From Chlorokybus atmophyticus (lineage: Eukaryota > Plantae > Mesostigma and Chlorokybus algae): a stretch of 64,000 nucleotides of DNA. The notes under the pieces were generated by a model, which saw only the letters and a list, made by a program, of their open reading frames with translations, was not told the DNA's origin and did not search any database. The DNA lies in the NCBI GenBank assembly GCA_009103225.1, contig RHPI01002272.1, forward strand, positions 1 to 64,000, written 5' to 3'. Numbering within the stretch: the stretch's first letter is position 1; the number at the start of each line of letters is the position of its first letter. Both the position numbers and the translations under genes were made by a program. Positions 6,723 through 60,369 of this stretch are shown here, one piece after another.

Positions 6723-6724
6723 GC

Positions 6725-7255: not shown

Positions 7256-7270
7256 TAACACATTTTTCGC

Positions 7271-7509
7271 TTAGCTTATTGACTGTGTGTCCTGTAGCAC
7301 AGCATGTACACAAAAGAGAACACCGCCTCCACATATCCGTGTTTTTCAGCGATAGCAAGCAGCTCCACCAAGAACTCCTCGCCATACAAGCTGGGTTATC
7401 TTTTGCTTTTGCTACATGTTACAACATGTTGCAGCAACAGGGCTAGCAAGCATGTCTTTCCCTGCAGCAGCCCGAGACAGCGTGACACTCAACTCTCCTC
7501 GACCCGACA
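7271..7509 (+). repeat. Second copy of segment X, ending CCCGACA
   Basis: Near-identical to 6484-6722 (cagcacagcatgtac...caccgcctccacatatcc...cgagacagc). Confidence 0.85.
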
Positions 7510-8149
7510 AAACAGTGGCCTGTTGGCAATCGACATTACCTTGAGGCGGACAATCGGCCAGAGTACTACACGTCTTTTTTTGGAGCTTCAGTATGAAAAA
7601 CACAACAAAACCGATGCACCGTCTTCAACACAACACGCATTGGACGAGATGAACGCCATCGAAGGGAACTCGTGAGTTGCGGTGCATGTCTCTCGCCTTT
7701 TGACAAGGTGTACTTCACCTTGTCACGAGACAAAGCTTCTTATAAGCTTGAGAGAAAAAATTTGCAGGTTGTAGTGGATTGAACGCTGGAATTGCGAGCT
7801 TGCGTATGTGTCCACTTGAGTCTGCATGTATGTGTATGTTTGCATGTGTCTTAGCATGTATACTATACATGCTCACGTTTTGTAGTACAATATGTGCATG
7901 ACATGATGTGCTCATACTGAAGACCTGAGCATATACCTGCAGGTGTGTGCGTCACTGAGTGTCTCTCTATGTGCGTATATATGTGCGCACATGCATGCGC
8001 GAAGAGGTGTGTGGCTGTGTGCATGCGGAATTTGGTGATGGCGGCTGTGTGCGCGCGCGCGTATATGCTTGAGCTACCTGCGTGCGTGCATGCCTGATTG
8101 TGAAGCGCTGCACTACAGCAGTTGTCATATCGGACAAAGTGATAGCTAT

Positions 8150-8459
<310 letters not shown>

Positions 8460-10100: not shown

Positions 10101-10499
10101 ACGTGTGTTGAGCACATGCAACTCACATGCACGCGACATTGATATGTACGCACATTGCATAATACAACGCTGATGGCAGCAGTACTGCAATGGTGGCATG
10201 TTTACTGCAATACAGCAGTTCCAACGCAAGTCAATTAAGCAAACCCATCATGGACACAGATCATAGGCGCCTCAATGCAAGATGAAATGACTCTAATGCT
10301 CATAACCATGGCACAGGCACACACCAAGGATATGCCCAAAATTGAGAAGGTGAGCATCACAAACGTGTGCAAGAGACAACGAATCTGTGTAAGGGACAAC
10401 GAAAGGCAACAAAGATGGCCGAGGAGATGCTTTGCGTACTTTGCCCTGCGCTGCTTTGCTTAGATTGGTAGCAGCAACACCTCGCTCTGTCGCGGATCT

Positions 10500-11406: not shown

Positions 11407-11450
<44 letters not shown>

Positions 11451-13800
11451 AGGTTGACGTCTGGTACTTACGAAGGAACAAACCGCAGTAGTTGTTGCTA
11501 TACTCCCAGCCTTTCACCCATTGCCTCCTCCTCATGCGCCGCCACCGCGGCCGCCGCCGCCACCACCAAACCTCGCTGCCGGTGATGAAAGAGTGATTGG
11601 ATAGCGCTAACCGTCAGCTTGTCCTTGTGGGCGGGGGCGGCGGCAGCATTGTCGTCTTCGCTGAGGATGAAGTAGGCGTCATCATCGTCTGACGGGTGTC
11701 CTGCCTCCAGCTCGAACATACCAACCCACGGGTTGGCTCCCACTCCGACGCCTCTCCTTTGCAACTCATGCTCTCAATCCCACACTTGCAAGCATCCAGA
11801 GAATGCGTAATCGCGTACAAGTTTATGGGAGACAAGCGAATAGGAGTATGTGCATTGGTCATCAAGAGCAAGAGTACATGTCTGTGACTTTGTGGTCGAA
11901 GAGCATGTGAACATGTATGTGCGAGACTGCATGTGTGGATGAGCGGTAGCGCTCGAGTTTTTGCTTCAGTGGCTGTGCCTGTGTTTGACTGTAGGGTTCA
12001 GCTTTTGTCATCACGTGCAGAATGTGTGAGTGTCGTGCTGTTGTCCTTCCGCTGCCTAACCATATACGCATGCAGTTGATAGCACCCTTGAAAGTACCAT
12101 GCTTAGTGTTGTAGTTGCTTTGGGAGTGTAGCCTGTCTGAGCAATGTACCCAAGTTGCTTGCTAGCATGGATGCAGCATGCGTAGGAAGCCACCCAACCA
12201 TCATTTTATGACAGGGTAGCGCGGAAAGCAACAGTGGTATCCGACGCAATGATACATAACTTACAGCATCCAGCATTGACTGAAACAGCGTTCTCGGCGC
12301 TGTCTCGTCCGCTCGACACATATTGTATTTATTTCTTTCTTTGCTGGCCACACTGCCTACACCAAGCGGACTGGCTAGTGCGCATAGCCTCGCCTAGCCG
12401 CAACTGTAGTCAGCCATTAATGCATGGCTGTCGCCTTACCCAACTAGGGCAAGTTGTGCGGCAAATTGTTGGTTGCCTATGACAGCATGTGGGGGCGATG
12501 TGGTTGCACACGCACGATCACATGGGTAGAGACTTGCCATCATGTATAGTACACAACTGTAGAGTACAAGTGAAGAGTACAAGTAATGCTAGACAACGGT
12601 ACACACATCATATCCGTAACAATCTGTGTGCCTTCTGGGACATGGGACATCCTGGTCCACTCTGTTTGGGGTGTAAGCGAGTCAACCGAAGTCGTACATT
12701 TGATACACTAACAGCCGGCGCCCTACCCGTGCAATCAAGTCTCTGTCAGCAAGGCAGGCTCCGGAAGAAGAGGCCTCTTGACAAATGTGCGCTGACCAAT
12801 GCCTGCAGAGCAACGGTCGAACAACACCTCGTCCAACAGGAACTCTATCCCCGCCAACACTGTGGGCGCAGTACTCCACGAACCACTTGCGGATGTTGGT
12901 ATACGCCATCCGGAAGGTACATCTGCGCAAGGTGCCATGCTTACCACCAGGTAGATCCCATCGGTTAATAAGAGGTGTTAGGTAGTTGCATTAAGGTGTT
13001 TCGACGAGCGGAACTATTCGACCAACTTGTTGTAGTTTCGTATCATAGCCAGCCCGGGCATGTCAGTCAATCCTTGTGCAATTTTCGGATATAATGTCCC
13101 AAGCACGATCAGCATGCAATGCTTCATTGCAAACGACGTCACCCTGGCATAACTCATTATACCCTCTTCGCCTAGTTCGCTTTGATATCAGCAAAGAAAA
13201 TGACAACAGGCACATATTTGCCGTACTAACAGGTGCCGTGCAACAGCACAGCTCTTACAGCCTACGATCATTTACATTGTAAATGGTAACAGTTAGGCAT
13301 GGTAGGCGCTGGGCAGGCGCCTATCGCTCCTGTCTGTCTCAAAGGGCGTTCACCTCGTCGTGCCCTGCCTTTGAAGGGCCAGTGCTGGGTTGTTAAAATC
13401 TGTCGCTTTGTCGGGGCCATCGAGCTCAAGCTTTGCTGTGGAACTCGCCAGCATCCGACGATGCAGGGCTGTGGCCTTGCCGTAGTCGTAATCCTCATCA
13501 ATACCTGCTACTTGCATATCTCAAAGCGTAGCCAACATGATGAGCCTTGGCAATGCTGCAAGATGCATTCGCATCTCTGCAGATTGCTCTGCTCCTTGCA
13601 GCGTGGGAAGGCTGCACAGCCCTCGACCACCCATTGGTGATCAAGAGATGCGACTGCCACTGTAGTCAGAGCACAAAGCCTTGCCACCGGTGGTGTACCC
13701 AGCGATTGGGTCGCCCGACAAATAGCCGTCACAGTCAAAATACCAGCAGCAGATGCTCTGCACCATAACCATCGCCTGCAGTGTCAGCAACACGTGCGTA
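10500..13800. repeat. Copy A of a roughly 3.5-kb duplicated segment (copy B about 60370-64000); contains highly degenerate LRR-like coding remnants on the minus strand
   Basis: Long collinear blocks shared with 60370-64000, e.g. ccagcctttcacccat/ac.gcctcc, catagccagcccgggcatgtcagtcaatccttgtgcaat, cctcgaccacccattggtga; remnants LCSLPTLQ, LPRLIMLATL, ISALPDGICLL. Confidence 0.8.
11409..11449. repeat. (GA)n microsatellite
   Basis: Read directly. Confidence 0.95.
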
Positions 13801-43994: not shown

Positions 43995-44794
43995 TCTGTG
44001 TTCATCAGCTACTGTCAGAAGGACAAGTCACATGCGCAACCTGACGTGCGAAACCTAGCGGACAGATTACAAGCCGATGGATTGCTGTGTCTTTGTGGAC
44101 TACATGAATGACGGGACAGTGTCGTGGCCTGTCTTTGTCGGACAGATGCTGGAGGACAGACCAATGCGCGCACGTTGTTTAGTTGCACCATTGGCCAGCC
44201 CCGTGTGACCGCAATTGCATGCATGGTGTGTGGTGTACTTAAGTTGCTGAGATGCTGGGTTCAGGTCGTTGTTGCCTGTGACGAGCACTACAAATTTGAT
44301 TCCCTCAAAGAGCCAGTCTTAGACAGCATCGACTTGCTGGGCAGGGGTACTCCTGACGAGTACACCAACATCCTTTACAAGGTGTATGAGCAACAATATT
44401 GAACGGGCTGGCTGGTGCCAGTAAACTTTATGCCTCCTGGTGAGATAAGCCACGTCCCCAGCCAGATTGTCAAGTTCAGTTACTATTCCATCAATTGGCA
44501 GATTAAGGTGAGAGACAGGGTTTCCACTGTGACTGAGCTTGCTGGCTGACTAAAGAGTACCTATCAGACGGCTCTAGTTGACCTGCCGATCAGCTCCCCT
44601 TGATGCTACGCATCAGCATGTGTGTGCTTACGCTGTATGTTCAAGTAGTTATGAGCAGTACTTGATCAACACGCTTGCAGAACCCTGCTGACCAAAGGTA
44701 CGACGACTTGCTGAAGCGCTTGCATAGTATCTCACCGTTTGTGACAGCAGCTGGAGCTACTGCCACGGGGCGCCGCCAGCTAGCACTGCTCTAA
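43995..44794 (+). pseudogene. SEFIR/TIR-like domain gene, copy 1 (exons about 43995-44170, 44265-44507, 44681-44794)
   Basis: SVFISYCQKDKSHAQPDVRNLADRLQADG / VFVDY..SWPVFVGQM / VVVACDEHY...GRGTPDE..ILYKVYEQQY*TGWLVPVNF...HVPSQI / YDDLLKRL; +1 frameshift and TGA at 44400-44402. Confidence 0.75.
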
Positions 44795-45139
44795 ACGACA
44801 GGTGATGGTTGTTACAGGCCTAAATGACAAAAAGAAGGTCGACGGATGCAGCTGCTGATGGGATGGCAAGTGCTCGATCAGGCTTGTGTTTTGGTCCTTC
44901 ACGTCGCAGTCAATGCACTGGCAGCAAGTGCGTAGCACCAGTACCAGTGCGTTCCTTGGAGTAACTGCTGATTGCTATGCACGAGTCGCCGATCTTCAGC
45001 AGCAGCTATCGCCAGCTCCTCGTCACAGGCGTACTTGTCAGTCAGAGAGTTGTTTGAAAACGAGGACATTCTCATCATCAATCTGTGGAGGGAGAGAGCT
45101 CAACCTGCAATGGACAGGCTTGTTGAGTTTTAAAACTCT

Positions 45140-45698
45140 TGCTCAGATTTCTACAGCAAATGTGCTCTCACCAATTGTGCTCTTACCAACAAGATGGCAG
45201 CCCTGAAGCGAAGCTCCTGCAGCTTATAAAAAACGCGCGCAGGTATGCGCCTATTGCGTTGCTTATAGCTACCTTGCCAGAGCACACACCCAGTGCGCAC
45301 ATCCACGTTTGCACAGCCTCTTTGTCGCCTATGACCGCCCCTTCACTTCCATTGTGTACATGCAGGGTGGTCTATGACTTTTGGTACAAGGCATGAAATT
45401 GGTACACGACCAGGCTGCTGCCTGTGGATTTCTTAGCATCCGCAAGCATTGGGTTGGCAGAGGAAACGATTACAGACTGCTTGTGGAACCCATTGATATT
45501 GCAAATTATTACCGCCTGAAGCTGTGCGAGCAGTGGCGCGAAGGCAATCGTCATTACCTGGAGGCGAACAACCGTCCAGTTCAATACGTGTTTCTGGAAC
45601 TTCGGTACGAGAAGTACAACCCAGGTAGCGTTGCACCCTCGTCAACGGACCATGCGCTTCATGAAGCAGACGCGGTTGAGGCCAGCGCGCAGCTGTAG
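45140..45698 (+). pseudogene. EDS1-family EP-domain gene, copy 1; disrupted
   Basis: IKNARR|VVYDFWYKA*NWYTTRLLPVDFLASAS-(D)WVGRGNDYRLLVEPIDIANYYR...HYLEANNRPVQY; intron 45243-45365; TGA at 45394-45396; 1-nt deletion near 45447. Confidence 0.85.
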
Positions 45699-47399
45699 AG
45701 CTCGCATGCAAGCGCGTGCTCACTACAGCTATGGCAACCAGCAACGCTTCCAATTGCCATTTGGGTGAGTCACCTCGTACAGCTAGGTTGCAACTCTGAA
45801 CACTTTACAAGGCGGATGGTAATGTACATACAGGACGGTATGCAGTAGATGGTTGAAAAGCCAACAGAGGCTTAGCGCACTGCAATACTAGTGCAAACAC
45901 CAGAAAACATTGCAGTTGCAGGGCTTGATGCAAAACAAAGTCATGCGCCAACATGTCCACCATACCATTGTTGACAAGTATGATGTTGCTGGCTTCATGT
46001 ATAACACATGTGTTCCAAGTTAGTGTGGACCCCAACTGTGTGCAAGTTTTTTGCGTCAACATGTCTACCTTATCACTGATATTGGAAGGCCTAAGCGCTT
46101 TGAGGCATGTAAGGCAGGCAGTGCAGGATGAATTACCCCATCTTTCCTGGGCGGCACAGCTGCCTGCGGATGAGGCAAACATGGTTCAAGCTTGTGCCTA
46201 GCAGCTTTGACAAACACCTGTCCAACTTTCTTAACACAATGTCGGGTTGTCCATTGGCGGCTTCAAACAGTAGCGTCTTGCACTGCCCTCTTGTTGACGA
46301 CCTTGACTACGCTCTTCCTTGGCATGGAGTCCTTGGAAGGACTTCCGAGATCAGCGTGTACAAGCCCCCCGCAACAACATGCCACTGCATCCTCATTGAA
46401 CGATTGAGCATGATTGATTCTGTGTGACGCTGCAGCTGCAATCTCATACTGCAAAAGCACTAAAGCAGGGTATATAAAGCGCTTTCACTGTGTACAATGT
46501 GTGACAATGGCTGCAGCCATGAGAGCAACAATTGCCGTGCACGCAATACCGTACGGTAAGCATATGCATATCTGCAAGCTACAACTGCTTTCTCTGCACA
46601 CTGGTATATATGTCAAGCTTGCTCAACTGAACTGCCAAGCCAACTGAAAAATTTTCTGGAATTGGTGGAGGTGCACTAATGGACTTGACTAGTAGCTGAA
46701 CTTTTCGGCAGGGCTTGTGGTCAGCTATGTAGAGGATTTCAGTAGGAGTAAAGCGCCCTGAGAATTTTCGATCTGTTTGGACATCAAGTGCAAACCACTC
46801 AGAGTTGCTATCTTCGTTTGCATTTGCATTCATAGATCCCCTCAACTCCCTGCATCAAACAAGCTAGGCTCAATTGTGTCACCTTCACCAAGCTCAGGCA
46901 TACAATGCTTGGCCAACAACGTCTCAACCCACCAGCATGCAGGGTCGCGATCGGGGCAGTCGTTCGCGCTGGTTACGCAGTAAGCTTCAACAACGTGCTC
47001 TTGGTCGTCCTTAAAAGTGTATGACAGCCAGCTACCTGTGTTGAAAGCAAACTGGTCAAGACAATAAGAGCATAATGAAACGCGTGCAGCATTGTGTATG
47101 AACTTGAACTTATTGCTCTTGTCTGCACACGCATCACGTCAGCCACGTCAACATGTGAGCTTGTCACTCACTCCAAGCCTCTCCAGTTCTGAAGGCAAGC
47201 CATTTGGTCTGGACATGGCCATCAAATGCGCAAATACCCAACTCATGCGGACGCCTTTCACCCGAGCACTTCACCCACCCACCAGCTATGCGTGGGCCGA
47301 GCATTGCCAGCTGCTTCCAATGCTTGGCGCTGCCAACTTGTGTTGCTGTTTCTTCTACAATATCGAGCAAGCCTGGATGCACGTCTATAAGCCCTTATA

Positions 47400-50300
47400 C
47401 ACGTCACCCCGTCACATTAGTCATATGCATGCGCCAGCAATCACCGTTGAGTTCTTGCTTGTCGAGGATACCCTGGAAGACGTCAAGCCCTTCAACAAGG
47501 ACCGTCAACGCGTCCACCGGTAAGGGCTTATGCTGCAACTGCTGCCGGCAAACTCTCACTTTCTCCTGCAATTCTTCAAGCCAGGTGCTAAGGGCCGCAT
47601 CTGTGGTGTAGCGCCGAAGCTGCTTGTGCATTGCGTTCATAATGCAACTTGCGGCTTCATCGCAAGCCGGAAGTCTATCTGCTCAAGCCAGCAAAGGGTC
47701 AGCACCATCCCTGGTGCCATTGATGAGAGCAAATACAAAAGAGGCAAAGAACAGTGACAACAGATGAGAGAAAATGATGCTGTTCCTACCTTTAGATTTC
47801 GCCATCTGGAACATTGTGGCAACTCGCCTGAAGTTGGTACTTGCTTCGCGCTCCAACTGCGCTTCCAGCTGGTGCCACACAAGCTTTTTGCAATTGCGAA
47901 TATGTTCAGGCACCTTGAGTAAGTTATTCCCCCAAATCCGTAACTCCTCCAAATGTTGCAACGACAGCTCGGGTAGGTTGTTAAGCTTATTGGAATCCAA
48001 CACCAGTTTCTTCAACTGTTGCAAGCGATTGACTTCTTGAGGTACCTCGACCAGATCATTTTGTGACACATCCAGCACTTCAAGGTGATGCAGTTCCCAC
48101 AGCTCATTGGCTGGCAATGATGCCAAACGAGTGTTGCACAGAATTAAATAGCGGAGGTCCTTCATCTTGCACACCTGTCAGGAAGCTGATGAGCGGCGCA
48201 GCATGGGAAGGAGGAAGGGGGCATATGCCCCCTATGCACTGATGCAGGAAAGATGCGCATTTACGACCAGCTGTTGCTCGTATGCCCCGACCTGCAGTAT
48301 TGTTCATAGTACATTGCCAGCATTGCACGCCCCTCACCTGCTGTAACAAGCCTTCTGGGTTACAATCGACATCTATTGAGCGCCAATGCTTGAGCTTCGG
48401 GAGCTCCAAATTGGGAATGGCACGCAATTTGCTGCAGAAGTCCAAACTAAGGAAAAGCAGATGTGGCAGCTTTAAACAAACTACTGTGGGTGCTGTGAGG
48501 GATGTCAAGGAGACGCAATAAGCGAGATCCAACATCTGCAGCAGGCATGAGATCAGTGGCATACTTGCATGCATGCAGATGCGGGCAGTGAGAGAGCTGC
48601 ACCTGCAGATTTGTAAACTTATTGATGTCCGGCAGGATGACAAGTCTACCGCAACGTGTCAACACCAGCGTTTGCAGTGAGGGCAGCTGCAGACAAAAAG
48701 AACCAGGACAGGGTGTAATTGAAGCTCTGCCAAGCACGAATAAGAATATTTCATTCCGTTTTGCAACTCACTTGGATATTTGCCTCTGCATCCCAGAGCT
48801 GCTCAAAACTGCCAAGGGACAAATCCAAAGCATAAAGTTTGTTGTATACTGCTGCTTCGATCACTTGCACGTTGCGCAGCATGTTCACTTGTAAGGATAC
48901 CAAGTGCTGTGCACTGCCTTGTAGAACCAAGTATGAAGCACAGTTCACAGCCAGTAGCCGCAGGCCTGGCCCGAATTCATCTGGTGCAACCCGCTCACGA
49001 TTGAGTTCGACCTGTATCTCCGAAAATTCGCCCTGCAGTTGACACTCAGCCTGTCTCAGTACTCTGGCCAATCTGAGGCCTTGACAACTTTCACAATCTC
49101 ACTATGCTGTGCATGGCGCAATGCACTGTGACAGCAACACGGCGGTAAGCGACAGGAGCGCCTAGTCTGGACACATACAAAGTAATGTGCGGCACACCTG
49201 CTGAGGGATTCCGCTGACATGATGCAACGTCGAAGGTTGGAGACATGAAAGCTGTTGCGGGGCTACCGTCTTTTTCAATTGCGTTCCTAGAATCACTAGC
49301 AAATCATGCATCACCAACAATCTACCAGCTATCTCTGGGTGTTCTTCCACACTTATAAGGGAGCTCTCTTGGAGGTTGAGTAGCACACGAGGAATTCCCC
49401 TTCGAAGGTCTGCAAGATCTCCAGGGCTGGTCCAGATGTACACTCCAGCTCGATACCCGCTATAAGTGCGTAGAAACGGATAGCACGCCAGGTCTTGAAA
49501 TGCATCACGTTCCTTGCTTCCAAGGCGGGTCAAGCTGAACTCAAGGATGCTGAATATGCCATCTTCCTTCTCACCATGTAAACTTTGCATTTCTGGTAGC
49601 CGCTCCAGATAGTGAAGAAACTCAACACGACTTTGATTACGCAGCGCACTTCCAATCACCTGAAGTGCCAGTGGCAGTCCACCGCACGCCTCCACAATGG
49701 ATTTAACGACAGGTGCACATACTCGGAAGGACTGCCCGCGCTCACCTGCAGCGCATACGTGCTCATGCAGCTCGTTACAAAGGAAATAATCACTCAGGTT
49801 GAACTCGTCCGTACAAGCGTTGTAAATAATGCCAGCAAACTCGTCTTGTTCCTTGCGAGTGTGCTGCCGGTATGCATGTCTGCAGAACAGGGTGATAGCA
49901 TCTAGTGGCCCTAAACACGACACTTGCAGAATTTCCACATTCCCCGGGTACTCCAGCCACCTGCGCTCCCAGGAAGTGAGAATCACCTTGCTGCCTGCAG
50001 CCACGGGCACCAGCAAATAGTCCGCTTGCTCCTTGGTAGTGACATTATCCACGACAAGCAGGACTTGCTCGTTTCTAAGGCGTTCTGTAAGTAACTGTCG
50101 TCCATCGCTCAAGTCGAGCCCAACATTGTCATCGGCAGGGGTCTTACAGAGGGCCCTCAGCATGGCTCGCTGCTGTTCCTTCAGTGCCACGGTGCTCTCT
50201 CCTGGATCAAGTGTGATGAAGCAGCTTCTTCCGCAATAGTCTGCGACAAAGTAATTGTACACATGCTTGGCTATGGTAGTTTTGCCCACACCTCGCATGC

Positions 50301-50630
50301 CAAGCAGTCCCACCACCGTGTGCGTTTCCAAACGCTTTATAACAGGTGCAGAGCGTGCATGGATGTCAACAGCCTCAACTGTAGCCACGGGCTTATGATG
50401 TATGCTCAGCTTTTGGCAAACCCAATGGACGACTTGTGTGGTGAGTTCCACTTCATTCCTGCACATGCAACGATACCAGCAGATCACAAAACTGGAAGGA
50501 TGCGAGATTTTGGGCACAGACATTGTTCGTACAACACAACAAACAGTACGCTGGCATACAGCAGTCCGATTCTAGCACCCAAAGCGTCAACTAGATGCCG
50601 CCAGCTCAGCAGCAAGCAACACAGACACAG

Positions 50631-50713
<83 letters not shown>

Positions 50714-51510
50714 CACTTGAACTCATTGCTTCTGATGCCTGGTATATCGAAAAGCTTTGCCATAGCCTGTAGCCAGTTTTTTCTTGTCTCCTCGTGCACC
50801 TGTTGCCCTTCTTCTATGGGTTGCTGTTTGATCAAGTCGAACTGCTGCTTCTGCAACTTTTCAAACCCGGTGAGTGGGGGGGTGGGGAGGGGGGTGGGGA
50901 GGGGGTGGGGTGGTTGTTCCTCGCTCCAGTAGAACACAGGTACGATGTTTTTGCTTTCGTTAATCGCTTTCACCAGCTCTGTTAGGCAGTCTATCGACTC
51001 CGAAAATCGCTGGGAGAGAATGACAACGACAACCTGTGCAGCGCTCAAGGCGTCCAACATACTTTGCTGCGCACTTGGGCTCCCTTTCAGATCATTGTCA
51101 TCAAGAAAGGGTTTGATAGAGTAGTTGGTGCGTTTCAACGCCTCATAGATATACGAGGCGAATGTTCTCTTGGTGTCGGGTCCTCGATGGCATATGAACA
51201 CATTCCACTGCACACACTCAGTCAGTGCTGAACAATACACAATGCGGTTGTCACACACACACACACGCGCAGGCGCAGGCGCACATATAAATGTATATAA
51301 GTGTATATGCATATAATGGAGCATTGGGTTCCTGTGTGACGAGCAATTTGAGACTGGTCGCGTCAGCGACACCATGTGACGCAAAGAGATACCCACACAA
51401 TGCCCAATCACATGAGGAAGTCTCAGGGAGCTTACTGCGGGTGCCGGGTCTTTGAGATTGTCAATGCTACAACCTTCAGCAAGTGTACTGAGAGATCCCA
51501 ATGAAGTCAT
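47400..51510 (-). CDS. TIR-NB-ARC-LRR (TNL) receptor-like gene; 3' end uncertain (may extend to about 45800 and may be degenerate)
   Basis: TIR exon 51207-50717 (VFICHRGPDTKRTF...FLDD...SIDCLTELVKAI, catalytic Glu retained); NB-ARC exon 50458-49198 with GMRGVGKTT, VLLVVDNV, GSKVILTS, CGGLPLAL, FQDLACY, VMHDLL and no stops; LRR exons about 49050-47790; canonical GT-AG sites. Confidence 0.92.
50637..50711. repeat. (GA)n microsatellite in the TNL intron between TIR and NB-ARC
   Basis: Read directly. Confidence 0.95.
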
Positions 51511-53438
51511 GACTGCGGGCAAGCGGGCTAAACAGAGAACGACGTGGTACTGTCCTCAGTGTGCCCGCACTGCTGCTTCACAAATCAACCCTGCGATTAG
51601 TTCGTGAAGAGGCGAGTGCCGAGATGAACTTCAATTACCCTCACATGCGATATGGGCGGATATACAAGGCATCTATTAGTGGTCAACTTTTATGTCTGGC
51701 CGGCTGCATGCATGCAAGATATGCGATCAGCGATATGCACGTGTGCAAGGCGTCTGTTAGTGGGCGTCGATTCATGTCTGGCCGTCTGCATGCATGCATG
51801 CTCGCAGTGTACTCTGAATCAAAGAACGGATGTGACCGCATCCGCATAGTCATCGTGTATGCGCATTGAGCTAAGGCAGGTAGGGTCAGAGAAGCTGTGC
51901 CAAAGGCAGTGGCCAGTCACAAGGTCACTGTGCATTCTGGCATGGCAAGTACGTACAGCTGCTAGGCGACGACCTCACGCCCGCCGCTGCCTGCCCACAG
52001 CAGCGAGGAGTGAGCCTCGCTGAGGTGCAAGAGCGACTCTGGACTGGCGGAAGAAGCAATCGCAAGCAGCGCTGCCAATCCGCTGGGCGTGGGGCGCAAG
52101 GAGGCCGGCACCGGCGGCCGCAACACCGGCAGCAGAGGCAATATCCGCCAATCCTGGTCGGGGCAGTGGCCAGCGCGGCACAATATCTGATGCCATTTGG
52201 CTACACGTTCTGGGCTCCTGAGGTTCCTCTGACCCTTTTCCTCTGCGGTCGTACCACCATTCCAAACCACCTAGGTGTTCCTCTCGCACCGCCGACAAAC
52301 TGCGAAGGGCACGTTTCAGGCCTGAAACGTGCCCTCCGCATTTGGTCGCGGTGTGAGAGGAACCGCTGGCGGTGGCGGCGGGGGCGGGCAATGTGGAGGG
52401 CGAGGGCGCGGGCACAAGACTAGCACAACATGCACCCAACACTGGCAGCCATCTTCGCCCTGCAGCTCGCTTGCCTCTACTGCTTCCAGCAAGCAGAGTC
52501 AGTGATTGCATGTGCCCGGTGCGGGTCTCTCGTCTGCGACTCTCGCTAGGCGGAGCAATATGCTCCCGGTTTGAGCAACAATGACGCCTTGATATGATTT
52601 TGTCATGTCAAGGAAACCTTTGCGTGGGCCTATTACTGGTCTGCACGAGTTCAACTACAACAACCAACTTCATGCATTAAACATGCTCAAGCGTTCGCTT
52701 TATGCTTCTTGCCGTTGTGATGCTTCCATGAAAGCCGCTGTAAGACGTAGCTCGCTCTGGCTAAGTGCTACTCACTACAAGCAGTTTGACGGAGATGAAT
52801 CATTACGGTCAGACTGCCGCAATAACAGCTGCGCAGATCTTGTTGGCGTTGCCTGCGAAGTCCAGCGGCGTAGCTGGCCTAAGCTGGCGTTCGCCTTGAT
52901 TGCTACCTGTTGTTAGGTTTGCTGGTGTACATATCTTCCTAGGATTTTGCAGCTGTACACGGCCAGACTTCCGTGGCGGCAAACATGTGGACAGCTGCAA
53001 ATACTAGCCAGGACATCGCTGACTACATGACGACATGCAAGCACCGATGGCCTGACTACCACATGCTATATTTGAATTCGTAAGTATCATTGGTTGAAGA
53101 TTTATACTCTCGTGTGCGCAGGCTGCATCAGCACCATGCTGCCCATGCTGCTACACTGTGTTAGCCAGCCAGGGGCCTTATAACGTCATTAATGGTGGAC
53201 CCAACAGCTTTAAGGTATCTTTAGATGAATTCCTTTGTGCCAATGCTTTGGAGAGCGCCATAACACCTGGGGAAGTCACGACCGTGAGACCCTTTGCTGG
53301 CGGTCAACAGGTGCGGGTCCACACATGGGCAACAATCATGTCTTGCTATGCATTGCATTTTGTCTTTTATGATCAAGCCTGCAAGGCTGCCGGGGTAATA
53401 AGCCAGAACATGTTGACAATGCATGCTTACGTGGTGAT

Positions 53439-53439
<1 letters not shown>

Positions 53440-53486
<47 letters not shown>

Positions 53487-53507
53487 NCCCCCCCCCCCCC
53501 CCCCCCC
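53440..53507. repeat. Poly-C tract
   Basis: Read directly; contains an N. Confidence 0.9.
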
Positions 53508-55360
53508 TGTCCGAATGCTGGTGCTAAAGCTGTTGCACACGAACACCACATGCCAGCGCTTGGGGGCAGCTTTGGTTGCGGATTGCCAATACGCCTCCGC
53601 GACAATCTCCCCAAAAACAGGATGCAGCATCTATTCTGATGCAGGAACCTGCAGCTGCGCCCTGGGTCTGCTCCTCCCACAGCAACGCCAGTCAGCTCAC
53701 CACCACCATCGTTATTGCCACCGGGCGGATTGCCAGGCAGGGCATTATACTGTCATCTGCTATGCAACCATGTGTTCAACGGGCCAGTCAAAGCAGTATG
53801 CAGACACACAACTAAGGGCGTGAACATGTCTACGTCTGTTTGTACCACACTGTGTGGTCGTCGTTGCGTCGGTCATCTTCTTGCAGTTGCTGCCCGCAAC
53901 TGTGCAATGCATGCATGTGTTGAGAGACTCTGACTGGTTATAACGCAGGTTGGAAACTTGCGCTCAAAATAATTGCTAGTTTTGTTGGAGCATGTTTGGT
54001 GGTGGATGGGCTATGTTATTGACACAGCCTGCGAGCGTTCTGCCGCAGTCAAGGTATTATGCAACCAAACAGAGGCACTGCCACAGTATGGCATACGTTG
54101 CAAAATATGAATAGATCGTCGTGGTCAGGCTGTCAGATGTATACAAGTCTTGCGCATGGTTCCTTAGTACTCTCTGCGTGCATGTGAAAACTGCACAGTA
54201 ATACACCCGCGTGCATGCAGAAAGTAGCTCGGTTCAATTGGGAAATAAACATGTGGCACAATCACAGGTTGTACAGGTCGTCGCTGGGAGGCGGTTAAAG
54301 TCAGACAGTTCGACCGCAGGTGAGCGAGTTGCGGCCATGATTATTATCATTGTGCTGCTCTTACCGTTGAGCAGTGGTGGTGTATGCTCATGCGGGCATT
54401 GTAGCGGCTAGTCGCATGCATGCTTGCCTAGGAAATCAATAACACTGGCGACAGTGCATCTGTGCACACATGTAGAGCCATGCTTGTTATGCATTCGCCA
54501 AATGCAGCATAAACTGTTGACAACTCATGTACTGCTGCTTGCAATTTGGAGCGAACAGTCTTGGTGTAGTGTCCTTCAGCGATACTGGGTCTAAAGCATA
54601 TTGCATCAGTACAAACCAGCTTTGAGATCATCCTGTCCGCAGTGTTGCACACAGGTGATGATACGCTGGTACCAAGCGCGGTAAATGGTATTCATAACGG
54701 GGCTGAGCCTATTGATAGCACTACAACCGTTGCGGCTGCAGGCAACGCGCGTGTGGCAGAAAGAGCAACCCATCCCATTCTAGAATTTGAGGCCACGCAT
54801 GCATCATCGGCGCCAGCAGGTGAGCTGCACTGCGCAGTTATGCTGCATATGTTGCATGTACATCAAATGCAGGACATGCATGCGCATGCACATGTACACA
54901 CAACACCTGCAGACAGATGTTACCACCTTGTGCATATGTTCTTTGGCTTGCAATTTTGTACATAGCATTTCAAGTCATGTGTGCTTTATTGCTCATGATG
55001 TTCCCCCAACTGAGTTGCACAGCCAGTGCAAAGTAAGATGAAGTGAGTCAAACTTCACATGGCATGCTAAGTTATTCGGTCTAGAATCGTAGAGTCGACT
55101 CCATCGCAAGGCATGCAAGTTGAATGTCACCGGTGCTGCGTGCAGGTGCACCCACACCAGTTGCTGTTGGGCAACCTGCTGCTGCGGCGGCGGCGGCGGC
55201 GGCTCATGCCGTAGCCGGAACCTCAACCAGTGCGGCTGCAGCAGGGTGCCTTAACTTGGCGTTGTGTACATCTTGCTTATTATGGCGTGCTGCAGACCCT
55301 GCACACCTAATGCTGTGACTCTGTTGCACTTCACTCTAACCCATGATGTTTTTTTTGTAG

Positions 55361-56050
55361 GCCGTCGAGTGTGCATACCTCTGTGTTTATCAGCTATTGT
55401 CAGACGGATCCAGAGCATAGAACGCGAGTGAGGCAGCTAGGAAGCAAGTTGCGAGACGGACGGTATCACGGTCATCGTTGACTACAAGCATGACGAATCA
55501 TTGTCATGGCCTGATTTCATCATACAAATGGTGGCACCAGGGGTGAAGGTGGGCATGCACTATACATGTGCTCAACTCTGTTACTTGATTGAATGAGCAA
55601 CACCCGTGATCGTCGGGTTTGCAGGTCATTGTTGCTTGTGATGAGCATTATGCGAGACACTGTCAAGGCCAGCGACCGCCCGGGGTGGGCCCCACATTAC
55701 CACTCCCCTCATCACCAGGTGAGGGGAGCGGTATTGGCGTTCGCATTGAGATGAACCTTATTTCCAACAAGCTGTACGAGCAACCAAACAATGCTCGTTG
55801 GCTAGTGCCAGTGCTGTTCGTACCGCCTGGCAGAAGAAAGCACGTGCCAAGGCAAATTGCAATGTACGATCACGTCATCATAAAGTGGCAAGAGCAGGTC
55901 AGACGGAAGCACTGTTTGGGTGCTGCTTGTAAGGTGCTGATGTGACGCCACTAATTTTTGACCCGCGCACCCGCTCATCAACTCTTACAATTTCAGGAGC
56001 TTGATGGGCAAGGTTAAAATCAATTATTGCGACGCTTTTCAGCCTAAGAA
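55361..56050 (+). pseudogene. SEFIR/TIR-like domain gene, copy 2 (exons 55361-55548, 55625-55897, from 55997); upstream exons possible
   Basis: SVFISYCQTDPEHRTRVRQLGSKLR / DGITVIVDY...SWPDFIIQM / VIVACDEHY...GIGVRIEMNLISNKLYEQPNNARWLVPVLF...HVPRQI / G*NQLLRRF; +1 frameshift near 55458; TAA at 56015-56017. Confidence 0.8.
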
Positions 56051-56369
56051 CTGAGTTTACGCCTTTGTTCAGTATAGAGAGGAGTGTGATTCATGTCACA
56101 ACCACCTTGCGTTGTCAACACTTGGTCAGCCCAACAGCTGTCATTTTATCCGCTAGTACGAAACTTGCTCCTTCCGAGGGAGTACTTGAACTTTAATGTC
56201 GAAGATCAATCCCTCAGGGAGAGTTTTATCATTCGTTTATAATAAGGAACCATTAATATAGTAAGTCGTAATGTGCATCCAATTGCTTTGCGCGATAGTT
56301 GAGTTTACATTGAGCATCTGCCACAATGCGTTTGGGATTGATGATAATGCAACTCATTATCGCAACACT

Positions 56370-56370
<1 letters not shown>

Positions 56371-56409
<39 letters not shown>
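56371..56409. repeat. Poly-C tract
   Basis: Read directly. Confidence 0.9.
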
Positions 56410-57008
56410 NGGGTCTGTGCATAATAGCGCACCAGGAAGTACACGCCGGGTGACTCATGATACTGCAAAAGCAGAGCTAAAAGCAAGACAAATAGCAGAT
56501 GCTCACCTTGCCAAATGCAGTGTATGCGTGCCTACCAACACGTGGTGCATCAAGTAAGTTCATGCATCTTTGAAGTTGTGCCGCACAACTTCAAAGATGC
56601 ATGAAAAGGAAGGGCAGCACTTGCACCTGCTGTGCACCTGCTCACCAAGTTACTGCGGGCTGCAATATGCTTCATGCATGGACCTGTCGTCAAGGCATGA
56701 CATGACATATCCACGGCCATCATTGTCACGATTATCAAGCTGTAACATATGCACACCAATCTATTGACTCATCACTTTAACTGCAACGTTTGCCCACCCT
56801 CGTTGACACAGCGCACAAATGGCATACCGGTCGCATGCCAATGACCGTCATGCCATGCACACATATCCGGCTAGACCATATGCATACACACCAGCGAATG
56901 TTGTGCAGATGTATACAAACAACTACATATTGCAACCGTCTGCAGACAAAGCCTGCTATGTCGCCGCGCCAATTGACAAGTGTGAGGTGGGCAAGGTTCC
57001 GAAAGATG

Positions 57009-57710
57009 CTAACTACCTAAACGCCTCACCCACCTTAACAGCTTGCGAAGTGACGTTAGTGACTCCGCTTTATCATTGGAGAGCTGATGAGCCCGCTGCC
57101 TGAGGATATGATTGGGCTCCCGGGCCTCTCTCACCCCAGCAGTGACGAGCTCCTGCAATGCGTTGTTGATTGAGCTCTCTTGCCTCTCGGGGTACGCATT
57201 GCGGTATGCCTGCTCCAGCAGGTAATAACGCCGCGGCCGCACAACAGCCTCAGCAACCGAGAGACGAAGGTAATGCTTGCCGGTGGAGGCATAAAAATTC
57301 GCACCCTTTGGAGAATACCAGTTGGCAATGTCAATGGGCTCCACCAGCAACCGATAGTTGTTGCCTCTTGCGAGCCAGTCGCTTGTGGAAGAAAGAATGT
57401 CCTCTGGGATGGAACCGCGCTCGTACTGCGTGGTAACCCAATCCCAAAAATTCTTAAGTTTTACCCGAGCTTTCTCAATCTGCGGTGGCCGGTTCTATTT
57501 GAAGCCAACATAGTAGTCTTGTTCGTCCTGGTACTGCTTGATAACATCCATCGCGTCATCAACACCATCGTACTTCATAGACAGCTCTGCTGCCTGCCTG
57601 TTTCGAGCATCTTCCCTGTTGCGCACAAAAGCATACAGTCCAAACAGGAACCCGAGCAAGCCGACCAGACAGGCGAGGATGCTGGGCCAGGGAGGCGCTG
57701 GTTCAGCCAT
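57009..57710 (-). pseudogene. EDS1-family EP-domain gene, copy 2, with an N-terminal hydrophobic helix; single in-frame TAG at 57495-57497
   Basis: One frame: MAEPAPPWPSILACLVGLLGFLFGLYAFV...DYYVGFK*NRPPQIEKARVKLKNFWDWVTTQYERGSIPEDILSSTSDWLARGNNYRLLVEPIDIANWY...GKHYL...RPRRYYLLEQ. Confidence 0.9.
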
Positions 57711-60369
57711 CTGTTGGGTTGTAATAAGCCCCACGCGTGCATGCGCTCTTGCTCTTGCTCCTTCCCCTTTGTACAGCGGACTCGGGCACTGCGCATGCAC
57801 GTGTTGATGTTCAGTTCACTGTTCAATTGATCCCCATTGCTTAGAGCGGACATGTTGCAACACCCCGCAGCAGTGCAAACGCTCCTGCAACCAAAATTGA
57901 TTGCAGACTTACTCAACGTGTGTAAGCTAAGCTGCCCCAAACCAAGCACCAGCCCAGCCAAGCTGTGGTGACTCGGACTGGCACGACTCAGTTCAGCTGG
58001 CGAGCATGATGGCAGCAACTGCTTACGGACATGTTTACAGCATGGCTAACGGGAGCGCTCGCATTAAGCAACAGCAACAACATTACAAGTTTAAAAGCCA
58101 ACTACTTGCTACAGCGGCCAGGGTGGAGCAAGAAACGCAAGCAGTACAGTGCTACGCCGGTATATGTGCATGCATGTAAGCCAGCGTGAGCAAGCTGTTG
58201 CACTGGTCGATACATAAACAGGCAGCACTGATGGCGTCTTGCACCTTCTAGCTAGCAAGCTAAACCAACCTCTCACCAGGTTTGAGCTTCAGGCTTCCTT
58301 GCTCCAGCAGCAACCTCTGGAGTTGAAGCCAACAGCTTCAGAGCAAGGACAGCGCCTCCTTGCTGACCCAGCCAGCCAGCAACCTCGTCGGGCTACCGCA
58401 GCGCCCCTTCCTACAGGCGCAAGTTGCCCATACCCTTACCCCTTCAGCGCAACGGCAGCGTCGCCGCCCGTCGCCCCCTCCTCCCTCCCGCCCACAGCGT
58501 CAACAAGCTGGCTCAACTTAACGCGAGCATTCCATTTATGAGGGGTAGGAGAAAGTCTTGCGGCCAGCACTTGACTTCGTCTCATCGGCTGCATGCGACT
58601 TGAAACATGTCTCCGGGTCCAAAAGAACGAGATACCGGTAGGTTACAGAATAGTGTCGTCTTCTGACAAAGTCTTTGTTACAACTTGCAGTATGGGCTCT
58701 GGTGTTTGGGTTTCAATGAGCGAGATGTTAAGACGCTATGCGACAGAGGAGACCTGAATGCCCGTGCACTATGTGCTAGAGATTGGCGGCGGAGTGGGTG
58801 GGGCGGAGCTGAGCCGTCATGCAGGCCGCTCTACCTACTGCTGGAGATAAGTGGTGCAAGCCGCTGACGGTTGGAGCAACTACGCCCTCCTCCCCGCCAG
58901 CCGGCTGCGCAGTGCAAAAGCTAGCGTTGGCTGCAAACACGGTGCGCTATACCTTCTGCTGTTGAGTAGGCTGCGCGTGTTTGCTGCTGTCGCACAACAA
59001 GTCTGCTTGGGCAGGGCAATCAGAAGTTACGTAGTACTCGAATAACGTGCTTTGCAATGGATAGCCAGCTGCAGCCAGTGTAGCAAGCTGGTTGCAGCTA
59101 GTTGCAACAATCAAGTAGGGTTGTTTGTGGTTCAGAAATATTGTCACTGAGCCGTGCTCCTGCAGACAAGGTTCTAAAAGTCATCGATGATCAATTCTTG
59201 TGACGCAGCGAGGTGTCTGCAGGTACGAGTGGCTTGACAATTGAAGATAGCAGTATCTGAAGGTAGGCATTGACGCGCCAAGTAGTAGTGATTAGTCCTC
59301 GTGATATAAATTCTGCACGACGCTGTCATGCCACTGCTTGCATTTCAGACACGTTGCTGACAACATAACAGCAGCCAGCTCGTTGCTGTCATGTTCTCCA
59401 TCAGTCAAATCAATCCTGCGTTCCGCGGCCAGCATGCATGTTTGCGTGCATTTTATGCTGCGTACGGGTATCTGCAACACGTCCTATTGCAGGTGAGTGG
59501 TAGGTGTTGGCAAGCAACTGCCTCGCATCTGCCACTACCTGCTCAACCAGTAATTTTTGCAAGAGCTTTGATCCACAAAACTGTGTCTGGACTCAAACAC
59601 AGATTTGAAAAATCAGTTGTAAGCAGCCCCCCACTCCCAAGTAGCTGCCCTTGTGAATGCCGTGCTTGTAGTGGTGTATCTGACCCTGCTGAAGGTTAAG
59701 CCCTTTTGTCGTTGATATCACCTTGTGGATGTGTGGCTGCATCGGCTTCGTGGCTCTCGTGCGTGCGTGCGTGCGTGCGTGGAAACTGCAATTGTATGTG
59801 TGTCTGTGTGCGTGTGTGCGCGTGCGCGCATGAGCGCATGCGCGGACACACGTGCGCGTCATGGTACATGCATGTAAACTACACAACAAGCGGGCACATC
59901 GCAGGGGTCGCCTTCCACCATTGCATCATCACTTGTCGTAGCCATTGTGTGACCAAGTACATGTACTAATGGCTTGATGTTAGCTATGGATGCACAACAG
60001 ATCAGCAGCACTGCTACCAGTTGTACCAATCGCGCTGAAGTACAACTTACATCAGAGTGCAGAGGCTTTCTAACTGTTGTAATCATCACTTGCTGGGTCG
60101 TTGTTAAGCATGCACATTGTCATGGTAGACTAGTGATAGCACACAATCTGGTAAGCGTTCCATGAACACATCTACAAACCATCAGTCAACTGTACAGTCA
60201 ACCACCTGCAGTAGTCATAGTCAACTTATACAGCACATTGCCATTAAAGCTAGTGTGAAATGATGATGCAATGGTTGCTATACTTGTGAGTTATAAACAT
60301 ACTTGGCTGACAACCACTCCAAGTGCACTTGCACACATGAGTCATGTGTCCACGTATGTGTCGAAACAG

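What the first reader, a model, noticed from the sequence alone, without database searches (positions are those of the whole stretch)
43995..57710. Candidate TIR-signalling cluster: a TNL flanked on both sides by a SEFIR gene and a stand-alone EP-domain gene
Seen: the order is SEFIR(+) - EP(+) - TNL(-) - SEFIR(+) - EP(-), with each SEFIR within about 0.4-1 kb of an EP gene. Established: seed-plant TNLs make TIR-derived nucleotide signals read by EDS1-PAD4/SAG101 lipase-EP heterodimers, and that family is generally described as seed-plant restricted. Inference: in what looks like an algal genome, physical linkage of TIR-enzyme genes with lipase-less EP genes could be an ancestral or parallel TIR-to-EP module. 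Caveat: all four flanking genes carry disabling lesions here.
Basis: partly seen in the sequence, partly recalled or inferred. Interest (0 to 1): 0.9.

Follow-up and report, generated by a model that had tools for sequence, protein, structure and literature searches.

The report
Algal TNL flanked by broken EP genes
In the early-branching green alga Chlorokybus, an expressed TIR-type immune receptor gene sits among broken copies of genes carrying the "EP" domain of the plant immune hub EDS1, and the same EP-next-to-TIR layout recurs in other green algae, so the link looks old even though this locus is mostly wreckage.

Summary
The domains are real. TIR, NB-ARC, LRR and two EDS1_EP hits pass Pfam. 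In the PDB the EP ORF matches only EDS1, PAD4 and SAG101, and a confident model of its intact paralogue gives those proteins as its top 23 fold matches. The genome is Chlorokybus, not a seed plant.

The gene count needs correcting. The left "SEFIR + EP" pair is one SEFIR-EP fusion gene, now dead: three in-frame stops, two frameshifts and a lost splice donor. On the right, a spliced SEFIR-only gene carries a 4-nt tandem duplication, and a membrane-anchored EP gene carries an in-frame TAG. Both lesions are present in RNA contigs, and an intact paralogue of the EP gene is co-expressed. The TNL looks intact and is transcribed.

Linkage of EP with TIR is supported beyond this locus. Chlorokybus paralogues fuse SEFIR-EP, LRR-SEFIR-EP and EP-TIR. 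Six of nine EP loci sampled from other algae or metagenomes have a TIR gene within 10 kb.

In passing, full lipase-plus-EP (EDS1-like) genes turned up in a trebouxiophyte alga and in a metagenome contig.

The scan had already reported algal EP-SEFIR/TIR genes elsewhere in this genome. This locus adds the cluster context and the gene decay.

The parts
43995..45698 (+). SEFIR-EP fusion pseudogene (copy A). The SEFIR part is 43995-44506, the linker and first EP helices about 45011-45160, and the EP core 45364-45698.
   Evidence: Collinear tblastn to P0015 and P0005. The EP ORF scores EDS1_EP 1e-8. Lesions: frameshift near 44085, no GT at the expected donor near 44160, TGA 44400, TAA 45131, TGA 45394, frameshift near 45440. 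Expression was not tested.
47407..51555 (-). TIR-NB-ARC-LRR gene. The TIR is 50717-51207 with the catalytic-position Glu at 50977-50979. The NB-ARC exon is 49198-50458. LRR exons run about 47790-49032. The 5' and 3' ends are not fixed.
   Evidence: Pfam TIR 3e-15, NB-ARC 4e-22, LRR_14 3e-13. P-loop GMRGVGKTT, GLPLAL and MHD are read in the ORF. A canonical GT-AG path joins all ORFs without a stop. Three RNA runs hold 0.50-0.68 of the 31-mers.
53946..56278 (+). SEFIR-only gene (copy B). It is spliced, with at least 7 exons and further exons upstream. The SEFIR domain is 55380-55894. A frameshifting 4-nt tandem duplication (GACG GACG) lies at 55455-55462.
   Evidence: RNA contigs of X1-X3 show six GT..AG introns and match the exons with 0 differences, the frameshift included. 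The spliced ORF ends 11 codons into the last exon, with no EP. tblastn to P0015 SEFIR gives 2e-15.
56776..57788 (-). Membrane-anchored EP gene (EP-B). The CDS is 57710-57009, with a TM helix near 57690-57620. An in-frame TAG lies at 57495-57497. The poly(A) site is at 56776, and a 5'UTR intron runs from 57789 to about 58269-58276.
   Evidence: EDS1_EP 2e-13. The TAG is seen in the DNA and in RNA contigs identical to the window. The intact paralogue P0001 has Lys there. A poly-T loose end marks 56776, and CT..AC joints mark the intron.
7498..7672 (+). Third, frameshifted fragment of an EP C-terminus (SEFIR-EP subfamily), next to a Ty3/gypsy element.
   Evidence: tblastn to P0015 residues 359-415 gives 84-94% identity in two frames. 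RT_RNaseH and rve ORFs lie at 4012-6370.

Best explanation
This is part of a Chlorokybus immune-gene cluster evolving by birth and death in a transposon-rich region.

Shown here. A canonical, transcribed TIR-NB-ARC-LRR gene is flanked by three decaying genes. (a) A SEFIR-EP fusion gene that is dead, with multiple stops and frameshifts. (b) A spliced, abundantly transcribed SEFIR-only gene disabled by a 4-nt tandem duplication inside the SEFIR domain. (c) A transcribed, polyadenylated gene for a single-pass membrane anchor plus EP domain, cut short by a TAG at codon 72. Its intact paralogue (P0001, Chrsp114S01653) is co-expressed. The EP domains are true homologues of the EDS1/PAD4/SAG101 EP domain, without a lipase part.

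Inferred. At family level, EP acts together with TIR-superfamily (STIR) enzymes, because in Chlorokybus the two are fused and in other green algae stand-alone EP genes sit beside TIR or TNL genes. The most likely mechanism, by analogy with seed plants, is that the TIR or SEFIR domain makes a nucleotide-derived signal from NAD+. EP domains, paired with each other and either anchored in a membrane or tethered in cis to the enzyme, would bind or transmit that signal. At this locus only the TNL is likely to be functional. The flanking copies are redundant relics.
For: Domain identity. In one search the only PDB sequence matches at E of 0.012 or better are EDS1, PAD4 and SAG101 (best 1.5e-7); the AF2 model of P0001 (pLDDT 86) gives EDS1-family chains as its top 23 Foldseek hits, probability 1.00, TM about 0.5 over about 206 columns.

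Species: best relatives are Chlat1 proteins; RNA contigs 100% identical.

Lesions and transcription. The paralogue-type RNA contig carries 57497 A>T (TAG to AAG), 57472 T>C (Lys to Arg) and 57463/57462 changes (Val to Gly), exactly the residues of P0001.

TNL integrity.

Fusions: P0015 and P0085 SEFIR+EP, P0017 LRR+SEFIR+EP, P0005 EP+TIR.

Conserved adjacency. L001 has a TIR 4 kb away. In L002 (Myrmecia bisecta) the EP gene lies between two TIR-NB-ARC-LRR genes. In L004 an EP is directly followed by a TIR. L005 has a 1019-aa TNL plus a TIR gene. L006 and L009 have TIR-NB-ARC head-to-head with TM-EP.

The SEFIR part of P0015 is nearest to bacterial SEFIR/TIR_2 clusters.
Against: No biochemical function of any algal EP, SEFIR or TIR domain was tested.

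The EP match covers mainly Pfam positions about 10-120 of 211, so this is a short EP, and whether it forms an EDS1-like dimer pocket is unknown.

The PAD4 residues aligned to the 'SDW' stretch differ, and the SEFIR-EP subfamily lacks the Arg at the position I align with EDS1 R493 (alignment inference only).

The SEFIR pieces of the window do not pass Pfam by themselves, and the SEFIR-EP structure model was too poor to use (pLDDT 41).

The enrichment of TIR near EP has no measured genomic background. Three of nine loci show none.

SEFIR-B mRNA is abundant despite a premature stop upstream of two introns, which fits a simple dead-gene picture poorly.

Expression of copy A and the TNL exon structure were not checked with reads.
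Confidence: 0.72

Rival explanations
1. The flanking genes are still functional. On this view the TAG in EP-B is read through, and the shift in SEFIR-B is bypassed by +1 ribosomal frameshifting, or a truncated product is used, so the cluster is a working TNL/SEFIR/EP module.
For: Both genes are transcribed at depths similar to the intact paralogue. SEFIR-B mRNA is abundant although its premature stop lies upstream of two introns. SEFIR copies A and B both change frame within the same roughly 15-nt stretch. Apart from the shift, SEFIR-B keeps open frames and the conserved CDEHY and WLVPV blocks.
Against: The shift in B is a plain GACG tandem duplication with no slippery motif. The shift in A is at a different base. 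The TAG context (AAA UAG AAC) is not a known readthrough context (own knowledge). There is no Met downstream of the TAG for re-initiation. The EP-B stop lies in the last exon, so its mRNA would escape nonsense-mediated decay anyway. Copy A has six lesions. An intact paralogue exists to carry the function.
Confidence: 0.1
2. The clustering has no functional meaning. TNL, SEFIR and EP copies simply pile up together because segmental duplications and transposons accumulate in this region. EP in algae would then do something unrelated to TIR signalling.
For: The window is rich in Ty3/gypsy sequence. Three of the four EP or SEFIR units here are broken, and a fourth fragment lies beside a retroelement. 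Three of nine outside loci have no TIR nearby.
Against: EP is fused in one reading frame to SEFIR or TIR in several annotated Chlorokybus proteins. Independent, only 30-45% identical EP genes in other algae and metagenomes sit next to TIR or TNL genes in six of nine cases, including head-to-head pairs about 400 nt apart.
Confidence: 0.13
3. The EP-like ORFs are not homologous to EDS1 EP (chance or convergent helical similarity), or the sequence is seed-plant contamination.
For: Only part of the Pfam model is matched. TM-scores are moderate at about 0.5.
Against: Pfam scores are above the curated cut-offs. In the PDB, EDS1-family chains give every match at E of 0.012 or better. They are also the top 23 fold hits, before a sharp drop to translin at probability below 0.5. 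The near-invariant motif WL.RG..YR.LVEPLDIANYY is shared. Identity to seed-plant EDS1 proteins is only 30-50% and confined to EP. The nearest proteins are Chlorokybus models.
Confidence: 0.03

Closest known systems
Seed-plant EDS1-PAD4 / EDS1-SAG101 heterodimers (lipase-like plus EP proteins that bind TIR-made pRib-AMP/ADP or ADPr-ATP between their EP domains)
   Same: The EP domain is homologous by profile, PDB sequence search and predicted fold. It shares the core motif LVEP(L/I)DIAN(Y/W)Y and the RP.RY block. It is genomically and physically associated with TIR-domain proteins and TNLs.
   Different: There is no lipase-like domain in the window (one search finds only EP matches). The EP is shorter. 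The N-terminus is a membrane helix (EP-B) or a SEFIR-type domain (EP-A). Heterodimer formation, ligand binding and helper-NLR recruitment are untested. The copies here are pseudogenes.
Chlorokybus SEFIR-EP, LRR-SEFIR-EP and TM-EP-TIR proteins (JGI Chlat1 models Chrsp103S01043, Chrsp235S03603, Chrsp114S01646, Chrsp5S06985, Chrsp114S01653)
   Same: These are direct paralogues. EP-B is 88% identical to Chrsp114S01653. Copy A is 60-74% identical in its EP part to Chrsp103S01043 and to the C-terminus of Chrsp5S06985.
   Different: The window copies carry stops and frameshifts and are not in the annotated protein set. SEFIR-B has no EP part.
Bacterial SEFIR/TIR_2 (STIR) defence proteins, and Thoeris-type systems in which a TIR enzyme makes a nucleotide signal read by a separate sensor domain
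   Same: The SEFIR part of the family is nearest in feature space to bacterial SEFIR/TIR_2 clusters (score 0.94). The enzyme-plus-linked-sensor logic is analogous.
   Different: The sensor candidate here is an EP domain, not SLOG or Macro. NADase activity of the algal SEFIR is untested. Pfam cannot separate SEFIR from TIR_2 for this domain (41 against 38 bits).
Plant NLR gene clusters evolving by birth and death, with expressed pseudogenes
   Same: An intact receptor lies among duplicated, truncated and frameshifted relatives in repeat-rich DNA, and some of the relics are still transcribed.
   Different: The decaying neighbours are not NLR paralogues. They are candidate signalling partners (SEFIR, EP).

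Membership tests
EDS1 family (EDS1/PAD4/SAG101) | C-terminal EP domain (Pfam PF18117) | tested here: met
   EDS1_EP scores 2e-13 (57012-57494, -) and 1e-8 (45378-45695, +), both above the 23.1-bit cut-off. The significant PDB sequence matches are EDS1-family chains only. The fold search top 23 are EDS1-family chains.
EDS1 family (EDS1/PAD4/SAG101) | N-terminal class-3 lipase-like domain in the same protein | tested here: not met
   Six seed-plant EDS1-family proteins match the window only in their EP parts. EP-B starts with a TM helix directly before EP. EP-A follows a SEFIR domain.
EDS1 family (EDS1/PAD4/SAG101) | Full-length EP helical bundle | tested here: inconclusive
   Pfam aligns only profile positions about 10-122 of 211. 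The AF2 model of P0001 aligns over about 206 columns at TM about 0.5 and rmsd 8-10 A.
EDS1 family (EDS1/PAD4/SAG101) | EP-EP heterodimer pocket that binds TIR-made nucleotides (for example EDS1 H476 and R493, PAD4 R314; preprint 10.1101/2022.05.02.490369) | not testable with these tools
   By my alignment offset, EP-B keeps Arg in RPRRY at the R493 position, while the SEFIR-EP subfamily has Q or Y there. This is inference only. No complex model or binding assay was run.
TIR-NB-ARC-LRR (TNL) receptors | TIR, NB-ARC and LRR domains in that order in one gene, with P-loop, GLPLAL and MHD motifs and the TIR catalytic-position Glu | tested here: met
   Pfam hits. Motifs read in the ORFs, with the Glu codon at 50977-50979. 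A canonical splice path joins the ORFs. The nearest NB-ARC relatives are seed-plant TNLs at 25-32% identity. The gene is transcribed. The exact exon structure was not confirmed by reads.
SEFIR domain (Pfam PF08357, STIR superfamily) | Match to the SEFIR profile | tested here: inconclusive
   The window pieces alone give no SEFIR hit. The paralogue P0015 scores SEFIR 3e-10 and TIR_2 3e-9. Copies A and B align to its SEFIR part at 5e-29 and 2e-15. The Atlas neighbours of P0015 are bacterial SEFIR/TIR_2 clusters.
Processed or unprocessed pseudogene (loss of coding capacity) | Disabling lesions relative to intact paralogues that are real in the organism's nucleic acids | tested here: met
   Copy A has three stops, two frameshifts and a lost donor. 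The SEFIR-B duplication and the EP-B TAG are present in RNA contigs from three libraries. DNA reads of the strain were not available.

The most novel reading that the evidence does not exclude
EP domains are the ancient partners of TIR/SEFIR enzymes throughout green algae and plants. On this reading the EP-TIR and EP-TNL gene neighbourhood, the EP-STIR fusions and even the lipase-plus-EP (EDS1-like) architecture predate land plants. Seed-plant EDS1 signalling would then be the survivor of a much older TIR-signal-sensing system, not a seed-plant invention.
Probability: 0.35. Interest if true: 0.9.

Novelty: new variant of a known kind. Interest (0 to 1): 0.66.

Why it matters
Plant immunologists ask how TIR domains and TNLs signal in lineages said to lack EDS1. 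The papers I could read treat EP as a seed-plant feature (PMC9806590, PMC10834447). A 2026 preprint concedes only "short EP-like sequences" in green algae (10.64898/2026.05.20.726525).

Here, genuine EP domains in a basal streptophyte alga lie in a TNL cluster and belong to families fused to SEFIR or TIR. Independent algal EP genes elsewhere also sit next to TIR or TNL genes. That gives concrete, expressible candidates for testing whether EP sensing of TIR products is ancestral. The candidates are the intact paralogues, not this locus.

The locus also shows that these partner genes turn over quickly, like NLRs. In addition, gene annotation hides EDS1-like genes in chlorophytes by splitting them.

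Tried and rejected
An alternative genetic code as the reason for the in-frame stops is rejected. TGA, TAA and TAG all occur as lesions, and long ORFs such as the NB-ARC ORF end normally.

A tiny intron at the SEFIR frame change is rejected. There is no room (38-50 nt of overlap, and the protein is collinear with P0015), and RNA contigs keep the exon uninterrupted.

Assembly error is rejected for the SEFIR-B and EP-B lesions, because RNA contigs are identical to the window. It was not tested for copy A.

The idea that EP-B continues past 57020 by splicing is rejected. The transcript is unspliced down to the poly(A) site at 56776.

A structure model of the SEFIR-EP fusion P0015 was too poor to search with (pLDDT 41).

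Word-index protein searches with P0015 and its SEFIR part found only Chlorokybus proteins. This says little about distant relatives.

The NB-ARC search could not see full-length TNLs because of the length filter.

Rfam found nothing in the window.

I could not locate the original report of "EP-like sequences in green algae".
Full report
WHAT IS THERE

The region is eukaryotic, with about 51% GC. It lies in transposon-rich DNA: RT_RNaseH and integrase ORFs sit at 4-6.4 kb.

On the minus strand, three ORFs give TIR (50716-51555, 3e-15), NB-ARC (49165-50571, 4e-22) and LRR (47686-48658). Reading these ORFs shows several motifs:
- the TIR strand NVFICHRG and a Glu at the catalytic position (CLTEL, codon 50977-50979);
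- the P-loop GMRGVGKTT;
- GLPLAL and MHD.

A path of canonical GT-AG introns of 67-258 nt joins all the pieces without a stop, for example ...FTNLQ|MLDLAYCVSL.... Three RNA libraries hold 50-68% of the 31-mers of 47600-51600. So the TNL is very probably intact and expressed, although I could not lay reads on it. Its NB-ARC is closest to seed-plant TNLs (RUN1-, Roq1- and N-like) at 25-32% identity, among proteins inside the search's length filter.

THE EP DOMAINS ARE GENUINE

- The ORFs 57012-57494 (-) and 45378-45695 (+) score EDS1_EP at 2e-13 and 1e-8, above the curated cut-off.
- Against all PDB sequences, the first ORF's matches at E of 0.012 or better are all PAD4, EDS1 and SAG101 chains (best 1.5e-7). 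The only other matches are two weak ones at E 0.23 and 0.74.
- An exhaustive phmmer search found 79 relatives. The closest are Chlorokybus atmophyticus JGI Chlat1 models.
- An AlphaFold model of the intact 258-residue relative P0001, built on 57 aligned sequences, has mean pLDDT 86.
- The 23 best Foldseek matches of that model in the PDB are all EDS1-family chains (probability 1.00, TM about 0.5). They are followed by a drop to translin at probability below 0.5.
- The shared core is W..RG..YR.LVEP(L/I)DIAN(Y/W)Y ... GHY ... RP.RY.
- No lipase-like domain is present. Seed-plant EDS1 proteins match the window only in their EP parts.

SPECIES

The nearest proteins are Chlat1 models. RNA contigs from three libraries of one organism, dated 2013 and 2021, match the window without a single difference over about 1.5 kb.

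The same libraries also hold a second contig type over EP-B. It differs at 57497 (TAG to AAG), 57472 (Lys to Arg) and 57463/57462 (Val to Gly). These are exactly the residues of P0001 (Chrsp114S01653). Hence P0001 is an expressed paralogue in the same organism, and the window is Chlorokybus. Earlier notes of this scan named the genus first. I confirmed it independently.

GENE MODELS AND LESIONS

Left side, copy A. Positions 43995-44506 (SEFIR-like) and 45011-45698 (EP) align collinearly with the SEFIR-EP fusion protein P0015 and with the C-terminal part of P0005. This is therefore one fusion gene, not two genes. It is dead:
- the frame shifts between ...LQADGLL and VFVDY (about 44085);
- the donor that copy B uses after ...GVK is absent (AAT|GC near 44160);
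- in-frame stops lie at 44400 (TGA), 45131 (TAA) and 45394 (TGA, where P0005 has Trp);
- a second frameshift lies near 45440.

Right side, SEFIR-B. RNA contigs define a spliced plus-strand gene with six GT..AG introns: 54054-54267, 54320-54741, 54820-55145, 55246-55360, 55549-55624 and 55898-55996. Further exons lie upstream of 53946, and the 3' end is near 56278. Exon 55361-55548 contains SVFISYCQ... in one frame and DGITVIVDY... in the +1 frame. The cause is a tandem GACG GACG at 55455-55462, and the RNA carries it too (0 differences). After the SEFIR domain the frame ends at ...WQEQELDGQG*, so this gene never had an EP part in its present form.

Right side, EP-B. This is a minus-strand gene with a 5'UTR intron (57789 to about 58270) and an unspliced coding region from the ATG at 57710. 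The protein begins with a hydrophobic helix (PPWPSILACLVGLLGFLFGLYAFV), followed by the EP domain. The stop is at 57009-57011 and the poly(A) site at 56776. Codon 72 is TAG (57495-57497) where P0001 has Lys. RNA contigs identical to the window contain the TAG. There is no Met downstream. Because the stop lies in the last exon, the mRNA should escape nonsense-mediated decay, which fits its high depth.

The two EP genes belong to different subfamilies, about 44% identical. The apparent mirror symmetry around the TNL is therefore not a recent inverted duplication.

SEFIR IDENTITY

The window pieces are too short to pass Pfam. P0015 and P0085 score SEFIR (3e-10) and TIR_2 (3e-9) almost equally. 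The language-model neighbours of the P0015 domain are bacterial SEFIR/TIR_2 clusters (0.94). I therefore call it a SEFIR-type STIR domain. Its fold could not be checked, because the fusion model was poor.

IS THE EP-TIR LINK MORE THAN CHANCE?

Within Chlorokybus, the annotated paralogues fuse the domains:
- SEFIR-EP: P0015 and P0085;
- LRR-SEFIR-EP: P0017, on the same scaffold as P0001;
- TM-EP-TIR: the front of P0005.

Outside Chlorokybus, EP proteins occur in Elliptochloris bilobata and Myrmecia bisecta, where UniRef names them "EDS1 EP domain-containing protein". They also occur in an Ascophyllum assembly and in many metagenome contigs.

I fetched nine such loci with 10-kb flanks. Six have a TIR within 10 kb:
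- L001: a TIR 4 kb away.
- L002 (Myrmecia): the EP gene lies between two TIR-NB-ARC-LRR genes.
- L004: an EP directly followed by a TIR (42% identical to the P0005 TIR, 3e-32).
- L005: a 1019-residue TNL plus a TIR gene.
- L006 and L009: TIR-NB-ARC head-to-head with a TM-EP gene.

I have no measured background density of TIR genes in these genomes. The enrichment is an inference: TIR genes are normally far rarer than one per 20 kb.

MECHANISM

Shown: homology, architecture, transcription, lesions and conserved neighbourhood.

Inferred from established seed-plant work (preprint 10.1101/2022.05.02.490369): TIR products bind a pocket between two EP domains. By analogy, the algal EP domains would act with TIR/SEFIR enzymes as signal-binding or signal-transmitting modules, tethered in cis or to a membrane. 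By alignment offset, EP-B and its relatives keep Arg at the EDS1 R493 position (RPRRY), while the SEFIR-EP subfamily does not. This is only a lead.

At this locus the partners are broken, so the working unit here is probably the TNL alone. Intact paralogues elsewhere would supply the EP and SEFIR functions.

COMPARISON AND NOVELTY

This is not a member of the EDS1 family as defined, because the lipase-like domain was tested for and is absent. It carries the family's defining EP domain in new architectures.

The literature I could search treats EP as seed-plant specific (PMC9806590, PMC10834447, 10.1101/572826). A 2026 preprint mentions only short EP-like sequences in green algae (10.64898/2026.05.20.726525). 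A search for SEFIR plus Chlorokybus found no paper.

The scan itself had already reported algal EP-SEFIR/TIR genes at other places of this genome. This locus is therefore not the first sighting. What it adds:
- the TNL-centred cluster;
- RNA-verified decay of the partner genes;
- the cross-species neighbourhood test.

SIDE RESULT

Two of the fetched loci carry the full EDS1 architecture.

In Elliptochloris bilobata (L003, plus strand), four blocks are collinear with seed-plant EDS1 proteins:
- a Lipase_3 ORF with GHSLGG (6801-7331, 6e-6);
- an ORF whose only significant PDB matches are PAD4 and EDS1 (7595-7813, 3e-8);
- the PFGTY-type block (9283-9600);
- the EP ORF (10224-10625, 9e-9).
The annotation splits them into two genes.

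In the metagenome contig L004 the same four blocks lie on the minus strand: 7764-8414, 7519-7785 (OsPAD4 6e-11), 6589-6822 and 5091-5513 (EP 1e-12). They sit 4.5 kb from an EP-TIR pair.

That the blocks form one transcript is not shown.

VERDICT

This particular cluster is mostly relics, but the family-level link between EP and TIR-superfamily genes in algae is well supported and testable.

Noticed in passing
L003:6801-10625 (+), Elliptochloris bilobata GCA_040144335.1 JALJOU010000074.1: Class-3 lipase-like ORFs, EDS1/PAD4-specific blocks and an EP ORF are collinear with seed-plant EDS1 proteins. This is an apparent full EDS1-like (lipase plus EP) gene in a chlorophyte, and the annotation splits it into two models.
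   Followed up: partly
L004:5091-8414 (-) and L004:10001-11168 (+), ENA ERZ22854972 NODE_514: This is a second full lipase-plus-EP gene. Its middle blocks match only EDS1 and PAD4 in the PDB (6e-11). An EP ORF directly followed by a TIR domain lies 4.5 kb away, and a TPR-rich gene is nearby. The organism is unknown and looks trebouxiophyte-like by its EP sequence.
   Followed up: partly
L002:640-22010, [Myrmecia] bisecta GCA_040144395.1 JALJOR010000009.1: The stand-alone EP gene (10001-12261) lies between two TIR-NB-ARC-LRR genes. This is the mirror image of the window's layout.
   Followed up: partly
window 7498-7672 (+): A frameshifted fragment of a SEFIR-EP-type EP C-terminus, 84-94% identical to P0015, lies beside Ty3/gypsy ORFs at 4012-6370.
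   Followed up: partly
window about 53460-53507 and 56372-56410: Homopolymer C tracts of about 38-48 nt each hold a single N, and RNA contigs break at the second one. It is unclear whether they are real tracts or assembly trouble.
   Followed up: no
window 54315-54742: The SEFIR-B transcript shows two splice forms at one intron. Run X1 has GT..AG. Runs X2 and X3 have a joint with nine extra letters (TGTTGCACA).
   Followed up: no
window 55361-56278: SEFIR-B mRNA is as abundant as its neighbours, although its premature stop lies upstream of two introns and would normally invite nonsense-mediated decay.
   Followed up: no
window about 50600-50700 (-): A long (GA)n microsatellite lies inside the predicted 258-nt intron between the TIR and NB-ARC exons of the TNL.
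   Followed up: no
L010:2-2598 (+), Logan SRR36092047 contig: A lipase-like part plus a full-length EP (about 200 residues aligned, 33-37% identical to seed-plant EDS1s) lies on a 44% GC contig of an unidentified organism. This may be a divergent EDS1-family member outside the usual groups.
   Followed up: no
P0005 (Chlat1 Chrsp5S06985): The annotated 640-residue model joins a TM-EP-TIR protein to a SEFIR-EP tail. The first SEFIR strand and helix are read in the wrong frame, so this is probably two genes merged, the second also damaged.
   Followed up: partly
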